Shown here: positions 10,193 to 54,280 of the stretch, in pieces
Position numbering within the stretch: the stretch's first letter is position 1
Layout: each line of letters starts with the position of its first letter
Assembly: GCF_001194135.2 (NCBI RefSeq)
Contig: NC_068986.1
Span: 66,199,315 to 66,263,314, forward strand
DNA from: Octopus bimaculoides
Lineage: Eukaryota
Length of the DNA: 64,000 nucleotides
Reading direction: 5' to 3'
Translations under genes and position numbers: made by a program
Notes under the pieces: generated by a model
The model's input: only the letters and a program-made list of their open reading frames with translations
What the model was told of the DNA's origin: nothing
Databases searched by the model: none

Positions 10193-11537
10193 CTAAAATA
10201 GAAAGACGGTATCAGTGAAACGAAGTAAGATATTTATTTAGTAAATGAAACCAGTTATATAGACCTGACCAACAAGTTATTTAACTGCTTTACATCTCAA
10301 AACCATCTGACACCTACAAACTACATGTTTTTTGAGCCAATCCTTTAAAGAATTTTACTTTGGTTTGTCACCATCTGACTTAATTAGATGGTAACAAGCT
10401 GAATTTAAGAAAAATTAAATAAATTAAAGATTAAATAAATCTCCATATGAATTCACATTTCTTCATAAAATTCTTGGAATTTGAATCTTAAATGTCAAGT
10501 AGTTTCACTTTTCTAGAATTTTAGGCAACCTGATATGGTGCACAACACTTTCTAGTTAAAGCTATGAAACCAAAACTAATATGTCACTAGCAAGCAACTG
10601 ACAAATCTTTTACTGCTATTGACCTCAAGTAATACTTCACAGGCGTAACTTACAAAACATCCTACATATAAGAAACTGAAAGACTTTCCAGAGCATCATT
10701 CATCAGTAGATCTAGAAATCAGTTGCATGAGTTTAGATAAGTTAAATATAACTTGTGAATATCTACAAAATCAACACATAGGAATTTGAACAGAACATAC
10801 TTCCTGACCATATTCCTAATATAATATATTATGTGTTCCAATTAATAATTTTGATAATAATCAAGAATTTTGAATGGTTTATTAATTTCTCTATTATTAA
10901 ATCAGTGGATCAAACGACTTAAAAATTTCTGACATAAAATCATATTTGAATGTTTAAACACGAACACTTTAAACAGAATAATTCAGAAACATCACCAAAC
11001 CTACAAGTTTATTATATCACAGATTTCATATCATAAAACTCTGGGGAATCTCTGGCAAGTTAGTACGAAAACAATCTATCTAGTAAGGAGGTTCTTAATA
11101 AAAATTGGGAACAACCTAAAAATGAGTTTAGTTTTAACTACAATTGAAAAAAAGAGAGTTCATCTATATCAATTTAAATCTACAATTGCCAATTTCTCAT
11201 CCACGGAAACTTAAAACAATTACAGAGCACCCACTATGAAAGAAGCTGTAGATCATCTAGCTTTGTTGTTATCGGGATCTAAGTTCAAATCTTGTTACAG
11301 TAAGTATTTTCTTAGAGAATCTGCTTCAAACCTATAGATTACAATATAATTGTGAAAGGGTTGCAAAGACAGAATATTTTATCTTTGAAATATTTCATAA
11401 AATCTAAAATATTCATTACAGGATTACTGAACAGTAACCAACATTTATTACAAAGACAAAACAAAGCATCAAGTGCTAATGCTATTAAATTTTTAGAAAG
11501 TACCTTTTTTGGGGGGGGGGGATATATAGACACAGGC

Positions 11538-31559: not shown

Positions 31560-32120
31560 AAGAATAAATGTATAACCCATGTATTGGCAATATGCCGTGC
31601 TTGTGAAGACCTGTTGAACTGAGTGAAATTGTAGTCATGGCCAATGTCAGTGCTGCCTAACTGGCACCCATGCTGGTGGCATGTGAAAAGCACCATCTGA
31701 GCTTGGCCGATGCCAGTACCATCCAAATGGTACTTATGCCAATGGCATGTAAAAAGCACCATTCAAGTGTGGCCGATGCCAGAGCCACCTGACTGACACA
31801 TAAAAGGCACCATTCAAGTGTAGCCAATGCCAGTGTAGCCAATGCCAGTGCAGCCTGACAGGCATCCATGCTGGTGGCATGTAAAAAGCACCATTCAAGC
31901 GTGACTGATGCCAGTGCTGCCTGACTGGCTCCCGTGCCAGTGACAAGTAAAAAGCACCCACTACACTCTCGGAGTGGTTGGCGTTAAGGGCATCCAGCTG
32001 TAGAAACCTTGCCAAATCAGATTGGAGCCTGGTGCAGCCTCTTGGCTTGCCAGTTCTCAGTCAAACCATCCAATCCATGCCAGCATGGAAAGCAGGCATT
32101 AAATGATGACAATGATGATT
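31560..32120 (-). mobile_element. SINE family 3 (ending in a GATGAT tail) with an internal tandem array
   Basis: Repeated CATGTAAAAAGCACCATTCAAG units at about 31680-31960, then GGGCATCCAGCTGTAGAAAC and CCATGCCAGCATGGAAAG..AAATGATGA. Confidence 0.85.
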
Positions 32121-32269
32121 ATTATCATCAGTTCTGTTATATATCTAGATGTTATACTTGTTATATATTATAATATTATGAAAGAGATGACAGAGGACTG
32201 AGATATGTGGTGCATTGCTGAACTAAAGATCTGCACACCACAACAGAACTGCAATCCTAAAACCAAGGT

Positions 32270-32520
32270 AGAATGTAAAAAGCATTGGTGCAGGTGCTGG
32301 TACCATGTAAAAAGCACTGGGGTGCTGGTGTCACATAGAAAGCAGCCAGTGCACTCTGTAACATGGTTGACATTAGGAAGGGCATCCAGCTGTAGAAACC
32401 AAGCCAAAACAGAATGTGGAACCTGGTGTAGCCCCCAGCCTTGCCAGTAACTGTCAAGCAGTCCTACTCATACCAGAATGGAAAACGGATGTTAAATGTG
32501 ATTATGATGATGATGATGAT
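32270..32520 (-). mobile_element. SINE family 3
   Basis: GGAAGGGCATCCAGCTGTAGAAAC..GGAAAACGGATGTTAAATG..(ATG)n tail. Confidence 0.8.
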
Positions 32521-38422: not shown

Positions 38423-39259
38423 AGAACAGAAAAAACTTCAACCCTTTAAGAGTAACGCTAAATAGGGTAATAAGTTTTACAGAAATAGTGGAAAACCAGG
38501 CTAAATGCAGTACACTATTTAAGGGTATAACTATGCATTCTACCCCTAAAGGCTCAGTAAAATACTGGCAAACATTGGGATCAATTATATCAACTGTACT
38601 CATTCTCTAAACAATTCTTGTGTCCAGCTGAAAAGAAAATCAATAGTGACACTAAATGTTCTTTAAATCAAATGTTAAATGACAGAATGACAGATCAGAC
38701 TCAATTGTACAGACCTATCTATGGTCAAGTACTTTTCTGTACTATTTTGTAGTCTATTAAAAAAGTGCTCATAAAACTACAATATTCGAATATGTCCTTC
38801 CTATTTTAAGATATTAAGGTGTTATTTGAGAGAGATTTGGTGGTTGTTTCTAGCAGGTAGGATGATCATGTAGAGCAATGATTCACAAACAGATTACTAA
38901 TACTTTAAAGTTTTACAACTCTTTGAAAAACCAATTATGGCAAAACTTAAATCATATCAGGACAAGGAAGCTCATAGTTGTGGCTGATGCTGGTGTCACA
39001 TAACTGGTAGCATGTCAAAAGCACTCACTACACTCTTGGGGGGATTGGCATTAGGAAGAGCATCCAGCCATAAAAAAAACCATACCAAATCAGATTGGAA
39101 CCTGGTACAACTCCCTGGCTTATCAGTTCTCTGTCAAACCATCCAACCCATGCCAGCATGGAAAACAGATGTTAAATGCACTTATTAAAAGGTTAAAATA
39201 TATTCTTTCCAATTCATTGTTTTACTTCATGCACGATCTACACTAAAATATTTTTATAT

Positions 39260-39517
39260 GCATCATCATCATCATCGTTTAACGTCCGCTTTCCATGCTA
39301 GCATGGGTTGGACGATTTGACTGAGGACTGGTGAAACCGGATGGCAACACCAGGCACCAATCTAAATTTGGCAGAGTTTCTACAGCTGGATGCCCTTCCT
39401 AACGCCAACCACTCAGAGAGTGTAGTAGGTGCTTTTACGTGTCACCCGCACGAAGGCCAGTCAGGCGATACTGGCAATGGCCACGCTCGAAATGGTGTCT
39501 TTCATGTGCCACCCGCA
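39260..39517 (-). mobile_element. Young SINE family 3 copy running into a gap
   Basis: (CAT)n CGTTTAACGTCCGCTTTCCATGCTAGCATGGG..CTACAGCTGGATGCCCTTCC with CpGs retained. The strand is assigned from the tail position. Confidence 0.9.
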
Positions 39518-40026: not shown

Positions 40027-41841
40027 CTTCAAGGGAGAAAAAAAAAGAGGGTGTGAATGTATGCATCCTCAATTTGGGGAAGAAGATTTCATTGACTGCA
40101 AAAACCATTCTAAATTTTTGTTTTTGTTTTTTTTGTTATGGGAAAGAGTATTTTTCCCTTTGCTTCAACCTACTTTTCTTTTTTTTTTAACAGCAACTAA
40201 GGAACAGTAGTAGGATAGATAGGTCAAGAAGCCAGCTACCCAACCCTGTTTCAAAGAATTCCTGAGTCATCATTTGGCATGATCTAGATAGAGATGAGAA
40301 ATTTGACTCCTTCAGCTTTGCAACAAGAGAAGTAATACAACTACAGATGTGTATATAGAGAATTCAAACTTATTCTGGAATAAAATAAACATTTAAGATC
40401 AAAGCTGTCTCCTCAGAGAACTCAACAGAAATCAACAAGTCTAGGTTTTATAACTTTCCCAATTTCTGTTATCTAGGGAGTTTTATTTAAAACCTTTTTA
40501 TGAAACCGTTTTAGGTAAAATATACAGAACTTGTTGATATCAGGGAGACAAAGAAAAGTAAAACCAAAAAAAAAATAATGAGAAAACTGAAATGAGTCAT
40601 ACAACACTGAGGAAAAAGAAAAATAAGTGTATCAAAATATAGAGAAAATTTCAGAAATTTTCATCAGACCACTGAAGCTACAAGAGGAAGTGCAATTAAG
40701 AGTTTCTGAGTGTGTACATGATTCAGCAAAGATGTCTTGATGTTTTTATCTTAGTTAGTACAGTAGAGAAGAGTTAGAGATACAATAAACATTTTAGAAA
40801 ATGTAGTTATCAATGATACTTTTAAGACCACCAAAAAGCAAGATGTAGGCTTCTGTCAATTAATGGGGAGGGGAACCTGCATTGCTCCATCTGTTAGAAA
40901 TAGCAACCAAATCTCCTTCACATTACACCCTCTGTATTAAATAATCCTTTCTACAATAGGCACAAGGCCTGAAATTTTGGAGGGTGGGGCTTGTCAATTG
41001 CATCAACCCCAGTGCTCAACCTGTACTTATGGAAAAGGTTCCACTACGCATTTTGTCCAGCATGCTAATGATTCTGCCAGCTTGCTGCCTTCTCTATTTT
41101 AAATAATCCAATGTAATATAGTTACTGATGTACAAAAATATAATGTAGTTAAGGCTGGAAAGGCTGGAAAGACTTTGATCATTGCCCTTCATTGTAGTTG
41201 GATGAGCCCAAGGAGTCATTCAAGCAGCAATGGATCGGAAAGTGTGGAATAACATCACCACCAGAATACATCATATAGCAGCATGCTGGCTCAGGGGACA
41301 GCCTCCTCCTCCAGTCACCAGCTCAGGATTTTACTTTACTTACTAGTGACACTGATGTCATCAGAGAAAAATATGTCTCACTTTCAGCGAACCTCTTATG
41401 AAATCAACATTATGTATTTAGTGTACAACCAGAAAATTAATGCAGAAGACAAATCATCATCCTCATCCTCATCATTTAACATCTATTTTCCATGCCAGCA
41501 TGAACATTTTAGATCAAATGACTTAAAACTTTCTTTGTCCCTTTCTTTGTAGATTTTATTCCCTTTCCATGACTTCACTTAATCACTAAAAGATTTACAA
41601 TTAGAAAAGTTATAAATGGTAACCATTATAAAATTTGTTACAATTCTAAAAGATTTTTAACATCTAAGGATTACAAATATCAGAAAAGGGAAACAGAGTT
41701 AAAGGCCGTCAGATTTCCATTTATGAATGTCAACCAAATAATTGTCTTCATCTCGGATTTCAAAATTCTCCAGAGAAATCTTTCTGCAAACATTATGGCT
41801 ATTGATTGTACAACTACATTTTAACCCCAAGAATCATTTAC

Positions 41842-41874: not shown

Positions 41875-43479
41875 CTAGATAAAACACAATAAAAAGTGAG
41901 CCCTCATGCAATCACTCAACATGCTAAAAGCAGCAATCAGATTCCCTCAAATCATACTGCCTTAAAGAAGGATACACTGGATTATGGTAGTCCTAGATAT
42001 ACAAAACAAGGAGGATGGTCAGGAATGTCTTTGATTATACATCTAAACAACATTTAGATATCCTCTCCAACCCATACACTACAAAGGAAAACTAAAAATT
42101 GCTTTATATTTATTTAGAAACAAGAAAAGAGATTGAGTGCCATTAGTGTTTTTTTGTATGGGTATTACAAGAGAAACGTTTACAGCAGAACCAAAACCAG
42201 ATGTAAACCATTATGAACAATATCTGAGGAGATTTCAATAATGTTAATTAGTCAGTCAAAATCCAAATAAAATGTCATAAATTTATATTATTTATATACT
42301 AAATATCAATACTCTTCAAATTTGACATTAAATACCCAAAAGTTTAAAAGAACCAACCAAGTCGTCAGGTCACTGAGTAAACATTATCAGTGACCTTCCA
42401 TGAACAATATTATCACAGAAAATATAAAGAGTAGCTGTAAAGCTGATATCTCCATTTAAGCCCATTAACAAGTACAAGGTTTTATGGTTCAGATGAAAAA
42501 TTTCCATAAACATATAAAGCAATTTCTAACAGTGGAGCACCGATGAAACGAGAATATGTTGGATATTACGTGTTTGTAAAATAAATCCCATGAATGATTT
42601 TTAACATAAATACAAGATTTTCAATTAAGTGTATGGAGTACAGTTAGATACATCACTTCACTGGTACTTTTATTAGTGCCAGAAAGATGCAAAGTCAATA
42701 CCAGAGAGAATTGAACTCAGAATATAAATAGCAGTAGTAGTCTGGCATTCCACCATTTCTTTCAACCCATCATGAATGACAATATGCAACATTTACAAAT
42801 AATACGAAAGAGAATGGATATAGTTATGGGGTAGAAATTGTAGCAAACCATGATGTCTAATAAATGTATCTTAATAAATTACCCAAGATTTAGGTGAACT
42901 GAAATATTTTAAAGATCTCTAGGACAAAAATATATTATAGATCTCATGTTAAACCCAACTTTAATATTCTATGCTAATATACTTTATAAAATTCGCATTT
43001 TTTAATATATGTTGGTTTAACCAAGTCAGCTCTAAATTGCTTTGCTTTTTTAAAAAATAGTTTTTTTATCTATTCTACTTTCATACTAAATTGCTATCAT
43101 GGGTGTCCCAACATCCTCAATACTACCCTATACTCATTGTATGGCAATAAGGTCAGATTCCTTTATTAAGAGAAAAGGTGTATCTATCATTTGTAGCAGT
43201 TTCAGATGTTACATATACATGTACAAGTGAAATCAGTCCCCTCTCAGCAACAGATCATACATCCATCAGAAAGTAAAACCTTAAGATTAAGAAGCTAGGA
43301 GCCATTTTCATACAAAATGTGTTGGACATGAAACTGCCAATTTTAAAGAGTTCAAATCTGATCTAAAAAAAAAAAAGCTTATATCATAATTTTATGAATT
43401 ACTGTTTTTAAAAGTTTCAAACACTAGCTTTAATAATGGGTTGTTTTACAAAATCCTTCCAAATTTTTGAATGGTCTCA

Positions 43480-44341
43480 AATTTTTGACATCAAATCCCA
43501 TAAATTTGACACTTAGTCCCACACTAGTTTATACTGCCAATATATTTCGATTTCTATTGTCCAACAATTATATTTATTGCAAACCTCTCGTAATATATAA
43601 AAAACAATGAATTAAAATATATCAACTTCGAATTCATAATCATGTATAAATACACGCCTGGTCTAACAAAAAAGAAAGAAAAGAAAAAAAGGAAAAAAGG
43701 AAACAACTAGCAATTTGGTATTTTTCTCAGAAATACAAACACCTACACAACGATGACAAATGTGCATAATGTATACAAATTAACAACTGTTTCATTGGAA
43801 GAAACAGATGACCTGAAGCATCAACTTAGAGCAGACCGGTGAAGTTAACATTTACTTCTTCCAATATAATCATCATCTTCATCATCATTGTTTAACGTCC
43901 ACTTTCCATGCTGGCATGGGTTGGACGGTTTGACGGAGGACTGGCAAGCCAGGAAGCTGCACCAGGATCCAATCTGATCTGGCAAGGTTTCTACAGCTGG
44001 ATGCCTTTCTTAATGCCAACCACTCCAAGAATGTAGTAGGTGATTTTACATGCCACCAGCACAAAAGCCAGTCAGACGGCACTGTCATTGACACTCGAAT
44101 GTTGCTTTTTACATGCCACCAGCACTGGAGCCAGTCAGGCAGCACTGGCATCAGCCATGCTTGAATGGTGCTTTTTACGTGCCACCAGCACAGGAGCCAG
44201 TCGGGTGGCACTGGCATCGATCACACCTGTATGGTGCTTTTTATGTGCCACCGGCACAACTATAGTAAGTTTTATGAAATAAATAAAGACAAAAAAGGTA
44301 CTGAAGAGAGAATGCCAATCAAGTAGATAAATGACAAAATT
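43480..44341. repeat. Local duplication copy 1 (order A-B), interrupted by a SINE at about 43870-44258
   Basis: 43480-43790 matches 46954-47270. 43796-43866 plus 44259-44341 matches 46767-46925. Confidence 0.9.
43870..44258 (-). mobile_element. SINE family 3 inserted within segment B of the duplication
   Basis: (CAT)n TGTTTAACGTCCACTTTCCATGCTGGCATGGG start, followed by an internal tandem array. The flanks are contiguous in copy 2. Confidence 0.9.
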
Positions 44342-44623
44342 AATTGGAAAACATATACAGTCCTGCAAATATAGTCCTGGTGCCAACTGCAAAGCCAGAA
44401 ATGTGGTCTACAAAATAAGCTGTATGGATGGTGAGTGTAAAAACAGAAACACGATATACATAGGTGAAACGGCAAGAAGTTTGGCTGAGCGTGTAAACGA
44501 ACATTGGAGGGACTATAATAATCAAAAACAAACCTCGGTGCTCTACCAGCATGCCAAAGAACAACATGGTGGTGTACTGGACAGAATTAGCATAGAAATC
44601 CTGTCTAGACACCCCGGTGACGC
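44337..44623 (+). mobile_element. Penelope-like retroelement GIY-YIG endonuclease fragment
   Basis: The open frame reads KLIGKHIQSCKYSPGANCKARNVVYKISCMDGECKNRNTIYIGETARSLAERVNEH..SVLYQHAKEQH..IEILSRHPGDA. It has VVY-x-I-x-C..C..YIGET..R..EH..H..H, the PLE GIY-YIG pattern, and is truncated by a SINE tail at about 44624. Confidence 0.9.
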
Positions 44624-46761
44624 ATCATCATCATCATCATCATCATCGTTTAACGTCCGCTTTNNNNNNNNNNNNNNNNNNNNNNNNNNNNNNNNNNNNN
44701 NNNNNNNNNNNNNNNNNNNNNNNNNNNNNNNNNNNNNNNNNNNNNNNNNNNNNNNNNNNNNNNNNNNNNNNNNNNNNNNNNNNNNNNNNNNNNNNNNNNN
44801 NNNNNNNNNNNNNNNNNNNNNNNNNNNNNNNNNNNNNNNNNNNNNNNNNNNNNNNNNNNNNNNNNNNNNNNNNNNNNNNNNNNNNNNNNNNNNNNNNNNN
44901 NNNNNNNNNNNNNNNNNNNNNNNNNNNNNNNNNNNNNNNNNNNNNNNNNNNNNNNNNNNNNNNNNNNNNNNNNNNNAAGTCTATCTGATCTGATATAAAC
45001 GAAATTGTTACAAACACACATATGGACGCACATACTTACATATAAGCACGAACACATAAGTGCGTGCACATATGAGTGTGCACACATACGAGCTTGCACA
45101 CACTCACATGCTCATACCGAACAGTTTCGAAACAACGCCAAAACAACGCCAGATCATACATTCAAAATAAATGGAAGTGGAGAGACAAGTTACTGAAGAG
45201 ATTGCAAGAGTGCAATGAAATAATTTAACAAAAACTATATAAATTAATAAAGGACTGAACCAGTGCATGTGTTTATTACTGGCATAATGCCTCTCCCAAG
45301 GTTTAATTGTATTTCTTTCAACACACGTATCCACATCAAGAATCTTGCACACGAAATACACATACGAAATATACAGTGTATTCCACTAAAAATGTCATCA
45401 CAAAAGAGTTAAAAAGACCTGTATAATTGTAAACTGAATATTTCCTCTTCCTATAAATAAAACATTTAAATTACACTTATACATGCTTTTATTGCATTAA
45501 AATATAAGTAATGGAAGGAAAATGTATTTCCTGACCATCATTTCAATTTATTATAGTCTCATCAAAGAATCTTGAGTTTAGTCATAAAGAAAGATGAGTG
45601 CTCCTCTTTAAAATTTCATTGTATGATTAAGTACTTGAAATTACAAATTTGTAATGACTACACAAGTGAAACATATTTGACCACAAGAAGTTTATTACAA
45701 TGTCTACGATGTAATGAGTAATTTTCTTGGCATACTTTGAATGACCTTTAAAAGCTATCAAGTCTAATAATGGCTATTACTTATATGTAAATCTCTGATG
45801 TCAGTTAGTTAACCCTTTGCGTTTAATGGCCTCAACAGCAACTACATTAAATTATTAACATTTCAAATCCAAGCATATAAAACAAGAGACTAAAACACTA
45901 TATGGTATTAATGAAATGCAAAACAGAGGGCAGCTGACTGCTCCATATTTGAAAAGCACAAATAAATAATAAACTTAGGGTTCATGAAAAATTCATACTG
46001 ATTCATGAATTAGCATGGAAATGTTTTTTGTTTCTAAATGTTCCAGATCGAGAATTTCATTTACTTTTGTTAGCACAACCTATTCAATACCAACAGCAAT
46101 TTATATGAGTTACTAAGGGACCATCTATACAGCTGCTCAACCTGCTAGACATAGCAGCTCAAATCACAACCTACTATCTTGAAAAAAAGTAAGGCTACGT
46201 TTAGGTAATGTAGTCAAAAATACACAAAAAAGACTGTCTTTGAACATGAGTCTACTCAATCAGAACTAACAACTTATTCCTATGCAAAACTGACCCAATG
46301 AGAATAACATATAGAAAGAATAAATATGAAATTATTAGATTCCATTTTTAATTGATATCACCAAGTTTGATTTGTTTTGGTAGCTGCTGCTTTCTAAATT
46401 GCAATATGTAGCACTAGAAACCACCTATGAGTTGATGAAGGAGCCATTGTGATTTGCATAACCTGCTAGAAATAGCAGTCAAATCTCAAATTATACTCTG
46501 CAGTCTTAAGAGAAAAACAAACTTTGAATAATGTATCATAACTAAACTGTAGCTGAAAATTTTTTTTAAAAAAGTAGAAGTGATGGCCAGAACACTTAAT
46601 CAGATTTACTCAATCAGGATTGATCTGACTAACCAAGAAGAAAAAAACTTACATATCTTTCATTAAATTATGTGTGTTTCCATTTAAAACAGAATCTATG
46701 ATGCACCGATTTGTTAAAACTTTGCAGCTTTCACTAGAATTCCATTGTTATTACCATCGGA

Positions 46762-47274
46762 TTACATGGAAGAAACAGTTGACTTGAAGCATCAACTTAG
46801 AGCAGACCGATGAATATAACATTTATTTCTTCCAATTTAATGACTATAATAAATTCTATGAAATAAATAAAGACAAAAAATGTACTGAAGAGAGAATGCC
46901 AATCAAGTTGATAAATGACAAAAATTATCAGTACAAAATATGGTACATTTTATAATTTTTGACATCAAGTTCCATAATAAATTTAACACCTACTCCCACA
47001 CTGCTTTACACTGCCAATATATTTTGATTTCTATTGTCCAACAACTGTATTTATTAAAAACCTTTCAAAATATATTAAAAGCAGGTTATTATGAATTAAA
47101 ATATATCAAATTCAAACTCATAATGATATATACATACAGACCTTGCCTAACAAAAAGAGAAAAGAAAAGAAAATAGGAAACTACAACTAGCAATTTGGTA
47201 TTTTTCTCAGAATACAAACACCTACACAATGATGACAAATGTGCATAATGCATACAAATTAACCACTGTTACAT
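46762..47274. repeat. Local duplication copy 2 (order B-A) bounded by TTACAT direct repeats
   Basis: TTACAT at 46762-46767 and 47269-47274; the segments match copy 1 in permuted order. Confidence 0.9.
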
Positions 47275-47427
47275 CAATCTGAGTGAGATTGCTTTACAGT
47301 TAGTTATTTAGTTTAACATGAATTGCTATTTCCTGTGGAGGAGGTTAATAAAACTATTGCTACACACCCCTCTGTCTTTTAAACATCTTCACAGCAAGAA
47401 ACCAGTCTAAGCAAGAAATTTCACAGA

Positions 47428-47900
47428 TCATCATCATTAACATTTAACAACCATTTTCTATACTGGCATGGGTTGGACAGCTTGACAGGAACTGCTAAGG
47501 CCAGGATCCACAACAAGTCCCTTAGTTTGTTTTGGTTTCTATAGCTGGATGCCCTTCCTGATGCTAACCACTTTACAGAGTGTACTGGGTGTTTTTTTAT
47601 GTGGCACCAGTGCCAGTGCTTTTTACATGGCACGAGCACCAGTGCTTTTATATGGCACGAGCACCAGTGCTTTTATATGGCACAAGCACCAGTGCTTTTT
47701 ATGTGACACCAGCACCCACACCAATGCTTTTTATATGGCACCTTGGTTTTAGGATATCAATTTTGTTGTGGTGTGCAGGTCTTCTTGAGAACAGCAATGC
47801 TCCACATACCTCGTCATCTTTGTAACACCCTGCATTTTGAGATCAGTCTTCAATACTTCATCTCAGGTCTTCCTGGGTGTCTCTCTGCTATAACTTGCCT
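47428..47900 (-). mobile_element. SINE family 3 with internal tandem array
   Basis: (CAT)n TAACATTTAAC..GGCATGGGTTGGAC..AGCTGGATGCCCTTCC..(GCACCAGTGCTTTTATATG)n. Confidence 0.8.
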
Positions 47901-48991
47901 TTACTTTTAGTGGTCAACACTTCTTCATGCAACATTTAAACATTAGCCTCACGCTGGTTTTTTTTTTTTTTTTCTTTTTTAACAATGTTTTAGGGTCAAG
48001 CACAAACAAAAATACTTCAGAATTTCTTTGATATACATGCCAAAGCAGACATTGGGGACAGATGCAGTCCTGGAACACATCAGTTCCTGTCATATCATCC
48101 AAGCCGTTTCAGCATGGGACAAAAGCATTAAATAATGATGAAAATAAGAAATTAATATATAAGCTCAATGTGTCCACACACACAAAGAAAATATACAAAA
48201 TCCAACAATTTTGTTATTTAAATCCATTCCATATAAAAATGAAATATGTAATAGGTTTGTTATATAAACACATACATTAGTATCAAATAACAGTTGGAAA
48301 CTAACACAAGTCAAACTAATTAATGTATGATGTTAAGGCAAGCTAAGAGAGAGTTATCTCTATAATGAAAAAGAAGAAAAGAAAAATGACATTTCTACAG
48401 CACCAAACATGCCCTCAAATTCCATTTATAGCAAATAACATAGTTAACCTATCCTTAAAGCTGGGAAATGTTGGCAAGAGAGTGGAATGCCAGATATTTT
48501 TTTTTTTTTTTTTATGGGTGAATCTAGTTCATTATCAGTCTGGACTCAAATTCTAACAAGACCAGCTTTACCTTTCATTTATCACAAGGAATTTATACTG
48601 AATAATCAAGGCCATGGAGTTGAAAAATTGCAGCCAGAAGGATATATTATTGGATTACTAGAGCTAGTAAAAATATACCTACTCCAAATGTAATATAGAA
48701 CATGTTAAAATTTCCAATTTCACAGATACTAATATAAAAATAATCTAATCACATTTTAGGATCTGGTAAACATTATTCTGTCTCTAAGAACCAGATGTTC
48801 ATAAATTTTAGATTCAATTTTTTCTATTTAACACCTATTCAACAGATAGGTGTTCTTTAATAAATTTTTTAGGGATAAACTTTTTAATCCTGAACAAGAG
48901 AGTTTTTATTCTATTTCATATAATCTTCCTACCATATTTACTGGAATTTTATATTCAAACAATGCTTTAATCTCAAAGAAGAAGGGTTATA

Positions 48992-49173
48992 TACAAGGGA
49001 GTGCTGAAAAGTTTCTGGCTTTGAGTACAAGAAAATACAGGAGAATCAGATTCACACGTTTATTGTAGCAGTCATTCAGTTTTTCTAAGCCTTGTAAAAG
49101 AACTTGGAAGGTTGGACCTCCAACTGGGCCTTCCATGATACCCTTAAAGCCAGGAACTTTTCAGCAACCCTTT
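48992..49173. mobile_element. Mariner-derived miniature element
   Basis: TIRs GGGAGTGCTGAAAAGTTTCTGGCTTT / AAAGCCAGGAACTTTTCAGCAACCC. Confidence 0.75.
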
Positions 49174-52084: not shown

Positions 52085-52774
52085 AGTGCCACACAGTGTG
52101 ATCACACTAGGAAACATAGTTGTGAAACAAACTTCTTAATCACACAGTCAAGCCCACTCCCATTATATATCATTTGAAAAACACTTTACGATTCAATATA
52201 AGAAGTTTGCAAATGGTTTTAAATAATCTTCTTGAATAATTTGCTTTAAAATGTACTTCTAAGAAATATTTTCTCACCCTCATTTTCTAGTGTTTCCAAA
52301 TTACTGGTATTTCAGTATCAAATCAAAGGCCACCCACTCAGACCTACTGCCCACACCATTTGAAAATAAACATATTTACTATTTCCTGCAGATGATCAAG
52401 AGGCTTTATTTTTAGCACAAATATGTAATACCTCTTCCTGAGCAAGAATTGTAATAGATAAAGTCACTATGGGAACACACAACAAAATTATTTTAATTCA
52501 GAAGAATTTTGACAGCTTTTTATAGGAGGGGGAGTAAGTGTATTTGTGAGTGAATGTATATATATATATATATATATATATCATCATCATCATCGTTTAA
52601 CGTCCGCTTTCCATGCTAGCATGGGTTGGACGATTTGACTGAGGACTGGTGAAACCGGATGGCAACACCAGGCTCCAATATATATATGCATATATATACA
52701 CACATACACACCACGCATGCACATACATATAAATATATATATACACACACATATATATACATCTATATACATAT

Positions 52775-52951
52775 TGAATGGGAGAAAGAGAGCCTGCCTT
52801 ATGTCGACCCAATAGAGGGACCAGCTATCCGAGTTGATAGTACCAGGGTAGATAAAGCAATTAAGAGTATGAAGACCGGGAAAGCCCCCGGCCCATCAGG
52901 AATCACTGCAGAGATGCTCAAAATATCTGGCAGTGTTGGCTATAGCCTAGT
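52775..52951 (+). mobile_element. RTE-type LINE ORF2 fragment (pre-RT region)
   Basis: EWEKESLPYVDPIEGPAIRVDSTRVDKAIKSMKTGKAPGPSGITAEMLKISG contains the KAPGP.GI..EMLK motif of non-LTR RTs and runs into a gap. Confidence 0.85.
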
Positions 52952-53365: not shown

Positions 53366-53779
53366 AAAATAATGGAAACACCTTAAAATTTCAAACAAAT
53401 TTATTTTAATATGGGGCAGGACCACCTTTGGCAGTGATTACAGCTTGAATTCTATGAGGTATGAACTCGTACAAAGTTTGAATTGTTTCCAAAGGAATTT
53501 TTGTCCATTCTTCAGCTAAAAGTCTCTAGTTCTTGTAGTGATGGTGGAGGATATCGACTCCTTACTTGTTTTTCTAAAATGCACCACAAATGTTCAATAA
53601 TATTGAAATCTGAGGACTGTGGTGGCCAGATAAGATATTCAACTTCAATAGAATGTTCCTCATGCCATTCAGTAACAACTTTAGCTGTGTAAATTGGTGC
53701 ATTATCATCCTGAAAGATTGCGTTTCCCCCTGGAAACAGTTCCGCAACCATAGGATGAATTTGATCAGATAAAATGCTT
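53366..53779 (-). mobile_element. Tc1 transposase, C-terminal DDE fragment
   Basis: IFQDDNAPIYTAKVV..WPPQSSDFNIIEHLW..; after a frameshift it continues IPHRIQAVITAKGGPAPY*. These are Tc1-family motifs. Confidence 0.92.
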
Positions 53780-54280
53780 AGTCTTGGTCAAGGTTACAAA
53801 AGTATTGAAAAATTAAAACAAAAAAATTCTTTGAAAGCATATATAACATCTCTTGGGTCAAGGATGTTGGAACAACGGTGGTTGAGAAATATGTCACTCA
53901 ATGCATCTGTGAATATCATATAACATCAACGGGAGATGATATTGTGTTTCAACAGTTGACATTCCTTCTGAAGTAGAGTCTAAAATTGTCAATGCCTATC
54001 ATATAAGTAAGATGAAGAAGTTACCAAAATACAAACTTTGTGATTTTTTAAAATCTTTTACTTGTTTCAGTCATTGGACTAGAGCAGTAATTCTAAACCA
54101 TTTCTTTTCTATTTTACTCAAATGGACCCTTATAGTCATTCGATGTTTAAAAAAATCTCATTATATTTATATGATTAAATATTATTAGGAATTGTATAAA
54201 AAAAAAATCATTAAAATATTTTGTGCATTGTAGAAGTAACCAATTTATTGCACCAAAATTTTAACAACAAAATCTTATAT

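What the first reader, a model, noticed from the sequence alone, without database searches (positions are those of the whole stretch)
43480..47274. Circularly permuted ~0.5-kb duplication (A-B ... B-A) with a 6-bp microhomology, suggesting reintegration via a circular intermediate
Seen: segments A (43480-43790) and B (43796-44341, minus an inserted SINE) recur 2.4 kb downstream in reversed order but the same orientation, as B (46767-46925) then A (46954-47270). Copy 2 is bounded by TTACAT at both ends (46762-46767, 47269-47274). The A-to-B junction of copy 1 carries one diverged version of that motif (CTGTTTCATTGGAAG). Neither simple tandem duplication nor a TIR element gives this order. Established: small eccDNAs often close at short direct repeats, and permuted duplications via circular intermediates are documented in animals. 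Inference: copy 2 was copied as a circle closed at TTACAT, then reopened elsewhere and inserted upstream, as DNA or as a reverse-transcribed circular RNA.
Basis: partly seen in the sequence, partly recalled or inferred. Interest (0 to 1): 0.72.

Follow-up and report, generated by a model that had tools for sequence, protein, structure and literature searches.

The report
Permuted half-kilobase duplicate in octopus DNA
A non-coding stretch of about 0.5 kb occurs twice, 3.5 kb apart, with its two halves in swapped order; this is a real, old, local duplication best explained by a small DNA circle or a looped template, a kind of event already known from cattle and humans.

Summary
A (43480-43795) and B (43796-43870 + 44259-44344, split by a SINE) recur in the same orientation as B' (46767-46928) then A' (46954-47274), at 84-93% identity. 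Copy 2 is bounded by TTACAT on both sides and copy 1 carries one diverged TTACAT at its A|B joint. Neither copy touches the assembly gap. One Penelope-like retroelement fragment lies collinear on both sides of the gap, which supports the scaffold join.

That fragment (44362-45368) is a separate insertion with its own 9-bp target duplication. Before it and the SINEs arrived, the two copies were about 1.4 kb apart.

No remnant of A or B flanks either copy, so an eroded tandem array has no support. I found no third copy in about 107 kb of octopus DNA. There are no splice sites, ribozyme, poly(A) or target duplication, so an RNA route is unsupported.

A DNA circle closed at TTACAT and reinserted nearby fits best (about 0.4). 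Replicative template switching and a low-copy mobile or tandem family remain open, because no octopus-wide search or orthologous locus could be reached.

This is a known kind of event, non-coding and about 10% diverged. Interest is modest.

The parts
43480..43795 (+). A1: segment A of copy 1
   Evidence: It matches 46954-47274 at 83.6%. Substitution divergence is 13.9% in its 5' two-thirds and 4.3% in its last 93 nt.
43787..43801 (+). Novel A|B joint of copy 1 (CTGTTTCATTGGAAG), holding one diverged TTACAT
   Evidence: (family D5). The two donor repeats lie at 46762-46767 and 47269-47274.
43796..43870 (+). B1a: first part of segment B of copy 1
   Evidence: 90.7% identical to 46767-46841.
43871..44258 (.). 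SINE-like dispersed repeat inserted into B1 after the duplication. It starts with (ATC)n and holds 66-bp internal repeats.
   Evidence: At least 8 partial copies in the window and copies in L002. B' lacks it, so 46841/46843 is the empty site. TRF finds period 66.
44259..44344 (+). B1b: second part of segment B of copy 1
   Evidence: 92.9% identical to 46843-46928.
44353..44361 (+). Left copy of ATATACAGT, the putative target-site duplication of the retroelement fragment
   Evidence: The same 9-mer lies at 45369-45377. Random window pairs of this size share a 9-mer or longer in 0.9% of trials.
44362..45368 (+). 5'-truncated Penelope-like retroelement fragment: GIY-YIG endonuclease domain plus 3' region. 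It is interrupted by a second SINE (from 44618) and by the assembly gap 44664-44976.
   Evidence: Pfam GIY-YIG E 2e-4. phmmer gives 730 hits; the best is O. bimaculoides LOC128248506, 78% identical by phmmer and 83% over 86 aligned residues by tblastn. DNA is collinear with L001 and L002 on both sides of the gap.
45369..45377 (+). Right copy of ATATACAGT
   Evidence: Homology to L002 ends at 45372.
45378..46766 (+). Original spacer between the two copies (about 1.39 kb with the 17 nt at 44345-44361). It holds an older ~320-bp tandem duplication (46103-46403 / 46425-46744).
   Evidence: No A- or B-like sequence in it. C1 versus C2 gives alignment z = 9.7.
46762..46767 (+). TTACAT, left boundary repeat of copy 2
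46767..46928 (+). B': segment B of copy 2, uninterrupted
46929..46953 (+). 25-nt linker between B' and A'. It is the place where the unit is broken in copy 1.
   Evidence: No significant counterpart at the ends of copy 1.
46954..47274 (+). A': segment A of copy 2, ending in the right TTACAT (47269-47274)

Best explanation
This is an old, local, non-tandem duplication made at the DNA level through a circular or looped copy of about 502 bp.

Proposed steps (all inferred from the product):
1. The source was copy 2 (46768-47274), which happened to be bounded by the 6-nt direct repeat TTACAT.
2. The segment was joined end to end at that microhomology, as MMEJ does when it makes small eccDNA. This created the A-end/B-start joint.
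3. The circle was opened inside the 25-bp stretch between B and A.
4. It was ligated, without a target-site duplication, about 1.4 kb upstream in the same orientation. This gave copy 1 (A-B).

Shown by the sequence: a SINE later landed in B1. A 5'-truncated Penelope-like element with its own 9-bp duplication sits 17 bp downstream of copy 1, and a SINE sits inside it.

The unit is non-coding, and nothing suggests a function.
For: The order is permuted, the strand is the same, and identity is 84-93%.

The outer ends of copy 1 map to points only 25 nt apart in copy 2. The outer ends of copy 2 are adjacent in copy 1. That is what one opened circle gives. Two independent breakpoints in a 508-bp unit would do this in about 5-10% of cases (my estimate).

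The 6-nt repeat lies exactly at both ends of copy 2 and once at the joint of copy 1; chance is 5e-4 to 2e-3.

There are no leftover A or B pieces upstream of A1, downstream of A', or after B1 once the retroelement is removed (nhmmer).

Copy 1 has no target duplication, as expected for end joining rather than a transposase or TPRT.

Circle-mediated permuted duplications are documented (PMC7188851). Small eccDNA depends on MMEJ (PMC9527254).

Both copies lie inside contigs, and the gap between them is bridged by one collinear retroelement.
Against: The circle is not observed; only its expected product is. A free circle has no reason to land 1.4 kb from its source, although the scan could only see local cases.

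Twenty-five nt of the unit are missing or unrecognisable in copy 1.

Divergence is uneven: 13.9% in the 5' part of A against 7.1% in the rest (Fisher p = 0.02). This hints at a less simple history or at mutation-rate differences.

Copy number in the genome is unknown.

The retroelement sits only 17 bp from the end of copy 1, and I can only call that a coincidence.
Confidence: 0.4

Rival explanations
1. Replicative template switching (FoSTeS/MMBIR) without a free circle. A nascent strand left the fork at 43479 and copied A' (46954-47274). It then slipped back at the TTACAT microhomology to copy B' (46768-46928) and returned to its original template.
For: The mechanism is inherently local, and the copies were about 1.4 kb apart. 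It predicts microhomology at the internal joint. It predicts no target duplication.
Against: It gives no reason why the second segment should stop within 25 nt of where the first began; I estimate 5-10% by chance. The two outer junctions show no clear microhomology (read).
Confidence: 0.2
2. A-B is a low- or moderate-copy repeat family whose master is a tandem array or a circle, for example a non-autonomous retroelement or a rolling-circle element. On this reading the two copies are separate insertions with different phases.
For: The region is full of mobile elements: SINEs, a Penelope-like element, a Tc1/mariner-type DDE remnant. Penelope-like elements and their non-autonomous derivatives form tandem or partial-tandem copies (PMC11167929; bioRxiv 10.64898/2026.07.22.740005). 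Translations of A weakly resemble the linker of the element's ORF (hmmsearch E 0.15-0.3).
Against: I found no third copy in the 64-kb window or in 43 kb of other octopus loci, even with an nhmmer profile, whereas the SINE recurs often. Two independent hits 1.4 kb apart in the same orientation by a rare family are unlikely. There is no hammerhead or other ribozyme, no inverted ends and no target duplication at copy 1. DNA similarity to the Penelope-like loci is not significant. The six-frame protein search gave nothing.
Confidence: 0.2
3. Multi-step linear history: an A-B-A-B-A array, or a duplication followed by a tandem duplication, later trimmed by deletions and split by insertions.
For: This is the common false positive for circle-like patterns (PMC7188851). 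An older ~320-bp tandem duplication lies right next to copy 2, so tandem duplication does happen here.
Against: No residual A or B sits at any of the four outer edges or in the spacer. The 17 nt before B' are only about 65% like the end of A, whereas the true A ends are about 96% alike. It needs at least three events with deletion ends that coincide with unit boundaries.
Confidence: 0.08
4. Reverse-transcribed circular RNA: a back-spliced or ligated transcript of copy 2, copied for one lap and inserted, possibly by the Penelope-like reverse transcriptase next to it.
For: Permuted retrocopies of circRNAs exist (PMC4897178). A Penelope-like fragment in the same orientation lies 17 bp from the end of copy 1.
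Against: No AG...GT pair at any phase of the TTACAT junction on either strand. No ribozyme. No poly(A) or target duplication around copy 1. The retroelement has its own 9-bp duplication, so it is a separate insertion. RNA folding z-scores are only -1.1 and -1.9.
Confidence: 0.05
5. Assembly artefact: a mis-joined scaffold or a chimeric contig.
For: The draft assembly has seven N gaps in 64 kb. One lies between the copies and ends inside a SINE.
Against: Both diagnostic joints (A1|B1 and B'|A') lie inside uninterrupted contigs. The copies differ by about 10%, which is too much for collapse or haplotype confusion. One retroelement copy continues in order across the gap.
Confidence: 0.04

Closest known systems
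eccDNA-mediated insertional duplication (Takahashi & Innan 2020, PMC7188851).
   Same: The duplicate has its two parts in swapped order and the same orientation. The ends of each copy are adjacent in the other. No extra flanking pieces are present.
   Different: This case is much smaller (0.5 kb against kilobases to hundreds of kilobases). It lies 1.4 kb from its source on the same chromosome, is non-coding, and lacks outgroup or read-level confirmation.
microDNA / small eccDNA formed by MMEJ at short direct repeats (review PMC9527254)
   Same: The size class is similar: the review gives an average of 100-400 bp, and this unit is about 502 bp. The circle closes at a short direct repeat.
   Different: microDNA is observed as free circles in cells. 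Germline reinsertion of one is inferred here, not shown.
circRNA-derived pseudogenes (Dong et al. 2016, PMC4897178)
   Same: Permuted order relative to the parent locus.
   Different: The junction is not at splice sites. There is no exon origin and no hallmark of retroposition.
Penelope-like element partial tandems / pLTRs and non-LTR retrozymes (PMC11167929, PMC8557442, bioRxiv 10.64898/2026.07.22.740005)
   Same: Tail-to-head joints of a repeated unit next to a GIY-YIG retroelement fragment.
   Different: The unit shares no significant sequence with the neighbouring element or with its relatives' flanks. There is no hammerhead ribozyme and no tandem array. The element has its own target duplication.

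Membership tests
Circular-intermediate (eccDNA-type) permuted duplication | Two copies in the same orientation with their parts in swapped order | tested here: met
Circular-intermediate (eccDNA-type) permuted duplication | The outer ends of each copy map to one point (adjacent positions) in the other copy | tested here: met
   The ends of copy 2 are adjacent in copy 1 (43795|43796). The ends of copy 1 map 25 nt apart in copy 2 (46928 and 46954). The 25 nt themselves are not recovered.
Circular-intermediate (eccDNA-type) permuted duplication | No additional partial copies flank either copy (this excludes tandem duplication plus deletion) | tested here: met
Circular-intermediate (eccDNA-type) permuted duplication | Short direct repeat or microhomology at the closure joint | tested here: met
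   TTACAT occurs twice in copy 2 and once, diverged, in copy 1. Chance is 5e-4 to 2e-3.
Circular-intermediate (eccDNA-type) permuted duplication | Donor and recipient settled by presence or absence in related genomes, and breakpoints confirmed by independent reads | not testable with these tools
   No octopus genome or read set is searchable by DNA. Exact-ORF look-ups found nothing.
circRNA-derived pseudogene | The permuted joint coincides with a back-splice (AG...GT) junction of exons | tested here: not met
   None of the 7 possible phases within TTACAT has AG before and GT after, on either strand (sequence).
circRNA-derived pseudogene | Hallmarks of retroposition (target-site duplication, A-rich 3' end) | tested here: not met
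   No poly(A) at 44330-44361.
Non-LTR retrozyme / Penelope-like non-autonomous element | Hammerhead ribozyme in the unit | tested here: not met
   Rfam search at gathering thresholds and at E<=10 gives no ribozyme hit.
Non-LTR retrozyme / Penelope-like non-autonomous element | Tandem or dispersed multi-copy family | tested here: inconclusive
   Only two copies in about 107 kb of octopus DNA.
Penelope-like element pLTR (partial tandem) | The repeats are the element's own UTRs and flank its RT-GIY-YIG ORF | tested here: not met
   A and B share no significant DNA similarity with L001 or L002. The fragment is 5'-truncated and carries its own 9-bp duplication.
Tandem repeat / satellite | Head-to-tail array of the unit | tested here: not met
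   TRF finds no array with a period near 500. The copies are separated by 1.4 kb of unrelated DNA.
TIR transposon / MITE | Terminal inverted repeats | tested here: not met
   0 inverted repeat pairs of 30 nt or longer in 42000-49000.

The most novel reading that the evidence does not exclude
This would be a germline record, in a cephalopod, of a roughly microDNA-sized (~0.5 kb) extrachromosomal circle. The circle closed by 6-nt microhomology and was reinserted next to its source. If the genome holds more such permuted pairs, small-circle reinsertion would be a measurable source of local duplication. A more exotic variant is one-lap copying of a ribozyme-less circular RNA by a Penelope-like reverse transcriptase. 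It is not excluded, but nothing supports it.
Probability: 0.1. Interest if true: 0.55.

Novelty: new member of a known kind. Interest (0 to 1): 0.3.

Why it matters
If the circle reading is right, this is a small and clean example that short eccDNA-like circles can re-enter the germline and leave permuted duplicates in an invertebrate. Such events have been described mainly for large segments in mammals. By itself it is one old, non-coding event without visible consequence. Its value would come from a genome-wide count of similar permuted pairs. The practical result here is an annotation of the locus: which parts are SINEs, which part is a Penelope-like fragment, and evidence that supports, but does not prove, the scaffold join across the gap.

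Tried and rejected
Hammerhead or other ribozymes in the unit: Rfam at gathering thresholds and at E<=10 found nothing relevant.

A viroid-like rod structure for the unit: z-scores are -1.1 and -1.9.

Remnants of a middle A copy after B1, once the retroelement is removed: not significant.

B upstream of A1, or B downstream of A': not significant.

The 25-nt linker of copy 2 being present at the ends of copy 1 (an exact rotation): I saw it by eye, but a permutation test gives P = 0.66.

A and B as decayed coding sequence of the Penelope-like ORF linker:
- By eye there are motifs (W..K-rich..WY, ER.G...K).
- hmmsearch E is only 0.15-0.3.
- tblastn gave nothing.
- DNA comparison with L001/L002 gives p > 0.07.
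- I treat this as not shown.

A chimeric retrocopy of Penelope-like RNA plus circRNA: disfavoured, because the 9-bp duplication bounds the retroelement alone.

Attempts to find further copies or the orthologous locus:
- The protein word search with the endonuclease ORF gave no candidates.
- The six-frame translation of the unit gave 0 hits.
- Exact-ORF look-ups gave none.
- DNA pattern scans of the metagenome and prokaryote collections gave 0.
- ENA/NCBI loci L003 and L004 turned out to be unrelated taxa.
- No host exon could be recognised among ORFs of 55 aa or longer in the window, so no anchor for an orthologous locus was available.
Full report
OBSERVATION

The region was read directly and compared with itself by the repeat finder, by blastn at two stringencies and by Smith-Waterman alignment. 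Three blocks match on the same strand:
- A1 43480-43795 with A' 46954-47274 (83.6% over 329 columns).
- B1a 43796-43870 with 46767-46841 (90.7%).
- B1b 44259-44344 with 46843-46928 (92.9%).

The order is A-B in copy 1 and B-A in copy 2. The 388 bp that split B1 (43871-44258) are a dispersed SINE-like repeat with at least eight partial copies in the window and more in an O. sinensis locus. B' is the uninterrupted empty site, so that insertion is younger than the duplication.

A 6-nt identity at two fixed points has a chance of 5e-4, or 2e-3 with 2-nt slack. blastn extends the left repeat to about 17 nt, but beyond TTACAT the match is 7/11 with an indel, which is at chance level. It is also far below the roughly 96% identity of the true A ends.

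The left edge of A is sharp at 43480. The preceding 27 nt are 52% identical to copy 2. The 25-nt linker between B' and A' (46929-46953) has no significant counterpart at either end of copy 1 (P = 0.66). Copy 1 is therefore about 95% of one unit, broken inside that linker.

THE GAP

The gap 44664-44976 lies between the copies. Left of it is an open reading frame with a GIY-YIG endonuclease domain (Pfam E 2e-4). phmmer gives 730 hits. The best is O. bimaculoides LOC128248506, 78% identical by phmmer and 83% over 86 aligned residues by tblastn. Longer relatives carry an RT-like domain upstream: RVT_1 in P0021, and YVDD and PLRP motifs in P0035 by my reading. I therefore call it Penelope-like.

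The DNA around LOC128248506 (L001) matches the window on both sides of the gap, in the same order and strand. Window 44366-44625 matches L001 10543-10802 (90.8%), and window 44980-45312 matches L001 11010-11383 (78.5%). A second SINE starts at 44618 and runs into the gap. So one retroelement copy, interrupted by a SINE, bridges the gap. About 207 bp of the element plus the rest of the SINE are hidden in the gap, which suggests the true gap is longer than 313 bp. This supports the scaffold join but does not prove it. Both diagnostic joints of the finding lie inside contigs.

WHAT LIES BETWEEN THE COPIES

Homology to an O. sinensis copy (L002) runs to 45372. The 9-mer ATATACAGT lies at 44353-44361 and at 45369-45377, at the two edges of the retroelement homology. 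Random window pairs of this size share a 9-mer or longer in only 0.9% of trials. I read the fragment 44362-45368 as a separate, 5'-truncated insertion with its own target duplication.

Removing it and the SINEs leaves copy 1, then 17 nt plus 45378-46766 (about 1.39 kb), then copy 2. That spacer contains an older, much more diverged ~320-bp tandem duplication (46103-46403 against 46425-46744, z = 9.7). It contains nothing that resembles A or B.

TESTS OF THE ALTERNATIVES

(a) Eroded tandem array. There is no B before A1, no B after A', no A after B1 and no A or B in the spacer. An nhmmer profile of the unit finds only the two copies. TRF finds no array. PMC7188851 shows that tandem duplication plus deletion is the common false positive for circle-like patterns and that it is recognised by such leftovers. 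None is present here.

(b) Repeat family. No third copy was found in the window or in 43 kb of other octopus DNA, whereas the SINE recurs often. A six-frame protein search, exact-ORF look-ups and DNA pattern scans found nothing, but none of these collections is an octopus genome. This rival is weakened, not excluded.

(c) Relation to the neighbouring Penelope-like element. A and B share no significant DNA similarity with L001 or L002. Translations of A give only E 0.15-0.3 against a profile of the ORF linker. The unit is not shown to be part of that element, and it is not its pLTR.

(d) RNA route. No AG/GT pair lies at any phase of the joint on either strand. Rfam finds no ribozyme. Copy 1 has no target duplication or A-tail. 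Folding z-scores are -1.1 and -1.9.

(e) Artefact. The copies differ by about 10%, the joints are inside contigs, and the gap is bridged.

MECHANISM

No one- or two-step linear path (tandem duplication, deletion, insertion) turns B-A into A-B ... B-A. One joint must be new, and the A|B joint carries the microhomology signature. The ends of copy 1 map only 25 nt apart in copy 2. One opened circle predicts this. Two independent switch points would give it in about 5-10% of cases (my estimate).

I therefore prefer a DNA circle or looped template of about 502 bp, closed at TTACAT by MMEJ and end-joined about 1.4 kb upstream (confidence 0.4). This is in line with what is known of small eccDNA (PMC9527254) and of circle-mediated duplications (PMC7188851).

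Replicative template switching (0.2) explains the closeness of the two copies better, but explains less well why the ends of copy 1 map so close together. A low-copy mobile or tandem family (0.2) needs genome-wide data to test. The remaining rivals are a multi-step linear history (0.08), a circRNA retrocopy (0.05) and an artefact (0.04).

The direction (copy 2 as donor) rests on one argument. A 6-nt repeat is a natural closure microhomology, whereas a 6-nt duplication at the ends of an opened circle would be odd. Outgroups are needed to settle it.

Two things remain unexplained:
- The uneven divergence: 13.9% in the 5' part of A against 7.1% elsewhere (p = 0.02).
- The retroelement landing only 17 bp from the end of copy 1.

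VERDICT

The event belongs to a known kind. It is old and non-coding, and its mechanism cannot be proven from the product alone. Interest is 0.3.

Noticed in passing
window 44362-45368 (with L001 10543-11383 and L002 10385-11476): A 5'-truncated Penelope-like retroelement fragment: GIY-YIG domain with an intact reading frame up to a SINE insertion at 44618. It is flanked by the 9-bp repeat ATATACAGT. In O. bimaculoides the closest relative is annotated as a gene (LOC128248506), which is probably a retroelement ORF rather than a host gene.
   Followed up: yes
window 46103-46403 and 46425-46744: An old, strongly diverged ~320-bp tandem duplication directly upstream of copy 2 (alignment z = 9.7). 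It is unrelated in sequence to A or B.
   Followed up: partly
window 43460-43470 and 43478-43488: The 11-nt motif CAAATTTTTGA occurs twice, 18 nt apart, exactly at the left edge of copy 1. The second copy is the start of A. It could be microhomology used at the insertion joint, or chance.
   Followed up: no
window 31636-32125, 32364-32517, 39004-39517, 41452-41502, 43871-44258, 44618-44663, 47427-47760, 52570-52679: Many copies of one SINE-like repeat that starts with (ATC)n and has internal 25- or 66-bp tandem repeats. Three of the seven assembly gaps start right after such a copy (39518, 44664, 52952), so this repeat appears to break the assembly.
   Followed up: partly
window 53515-53787 (- strand): A remnant of a DDE transposase of Tc1/mariner type (Pfam DDE_3, E 4e-12).
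   Followed up: partly
window 52659-52950 (+ strand): An ORF running into a gap whose sequence (..KAPGPSGITAEMLK..) looks like the N-terminal part of a LINE reverse transcriptase. Pfam gave no hit for the 51-aa piece tested.
   Followed up: partly
window 45007-45121 (- strand): Sub-threshold Rfam hits to several miRNA hairpin families (mir-297: 34 bits against a gathering score of 90) in a CA/TG-rich low-complexity tract inside the retroelement's 3' region. L001 holds the same tract in expanded form. These are most likely chance hits to simple sequence.
   Followed up: no
L002 9853-9925 versus 11350-11476: In the O. sinensis locus, part of the retroelement's 3' region recurs upstream in inverted orientation. 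This is the kind of inverted partial copy described for Penelope-like elements.
   Followed up: no
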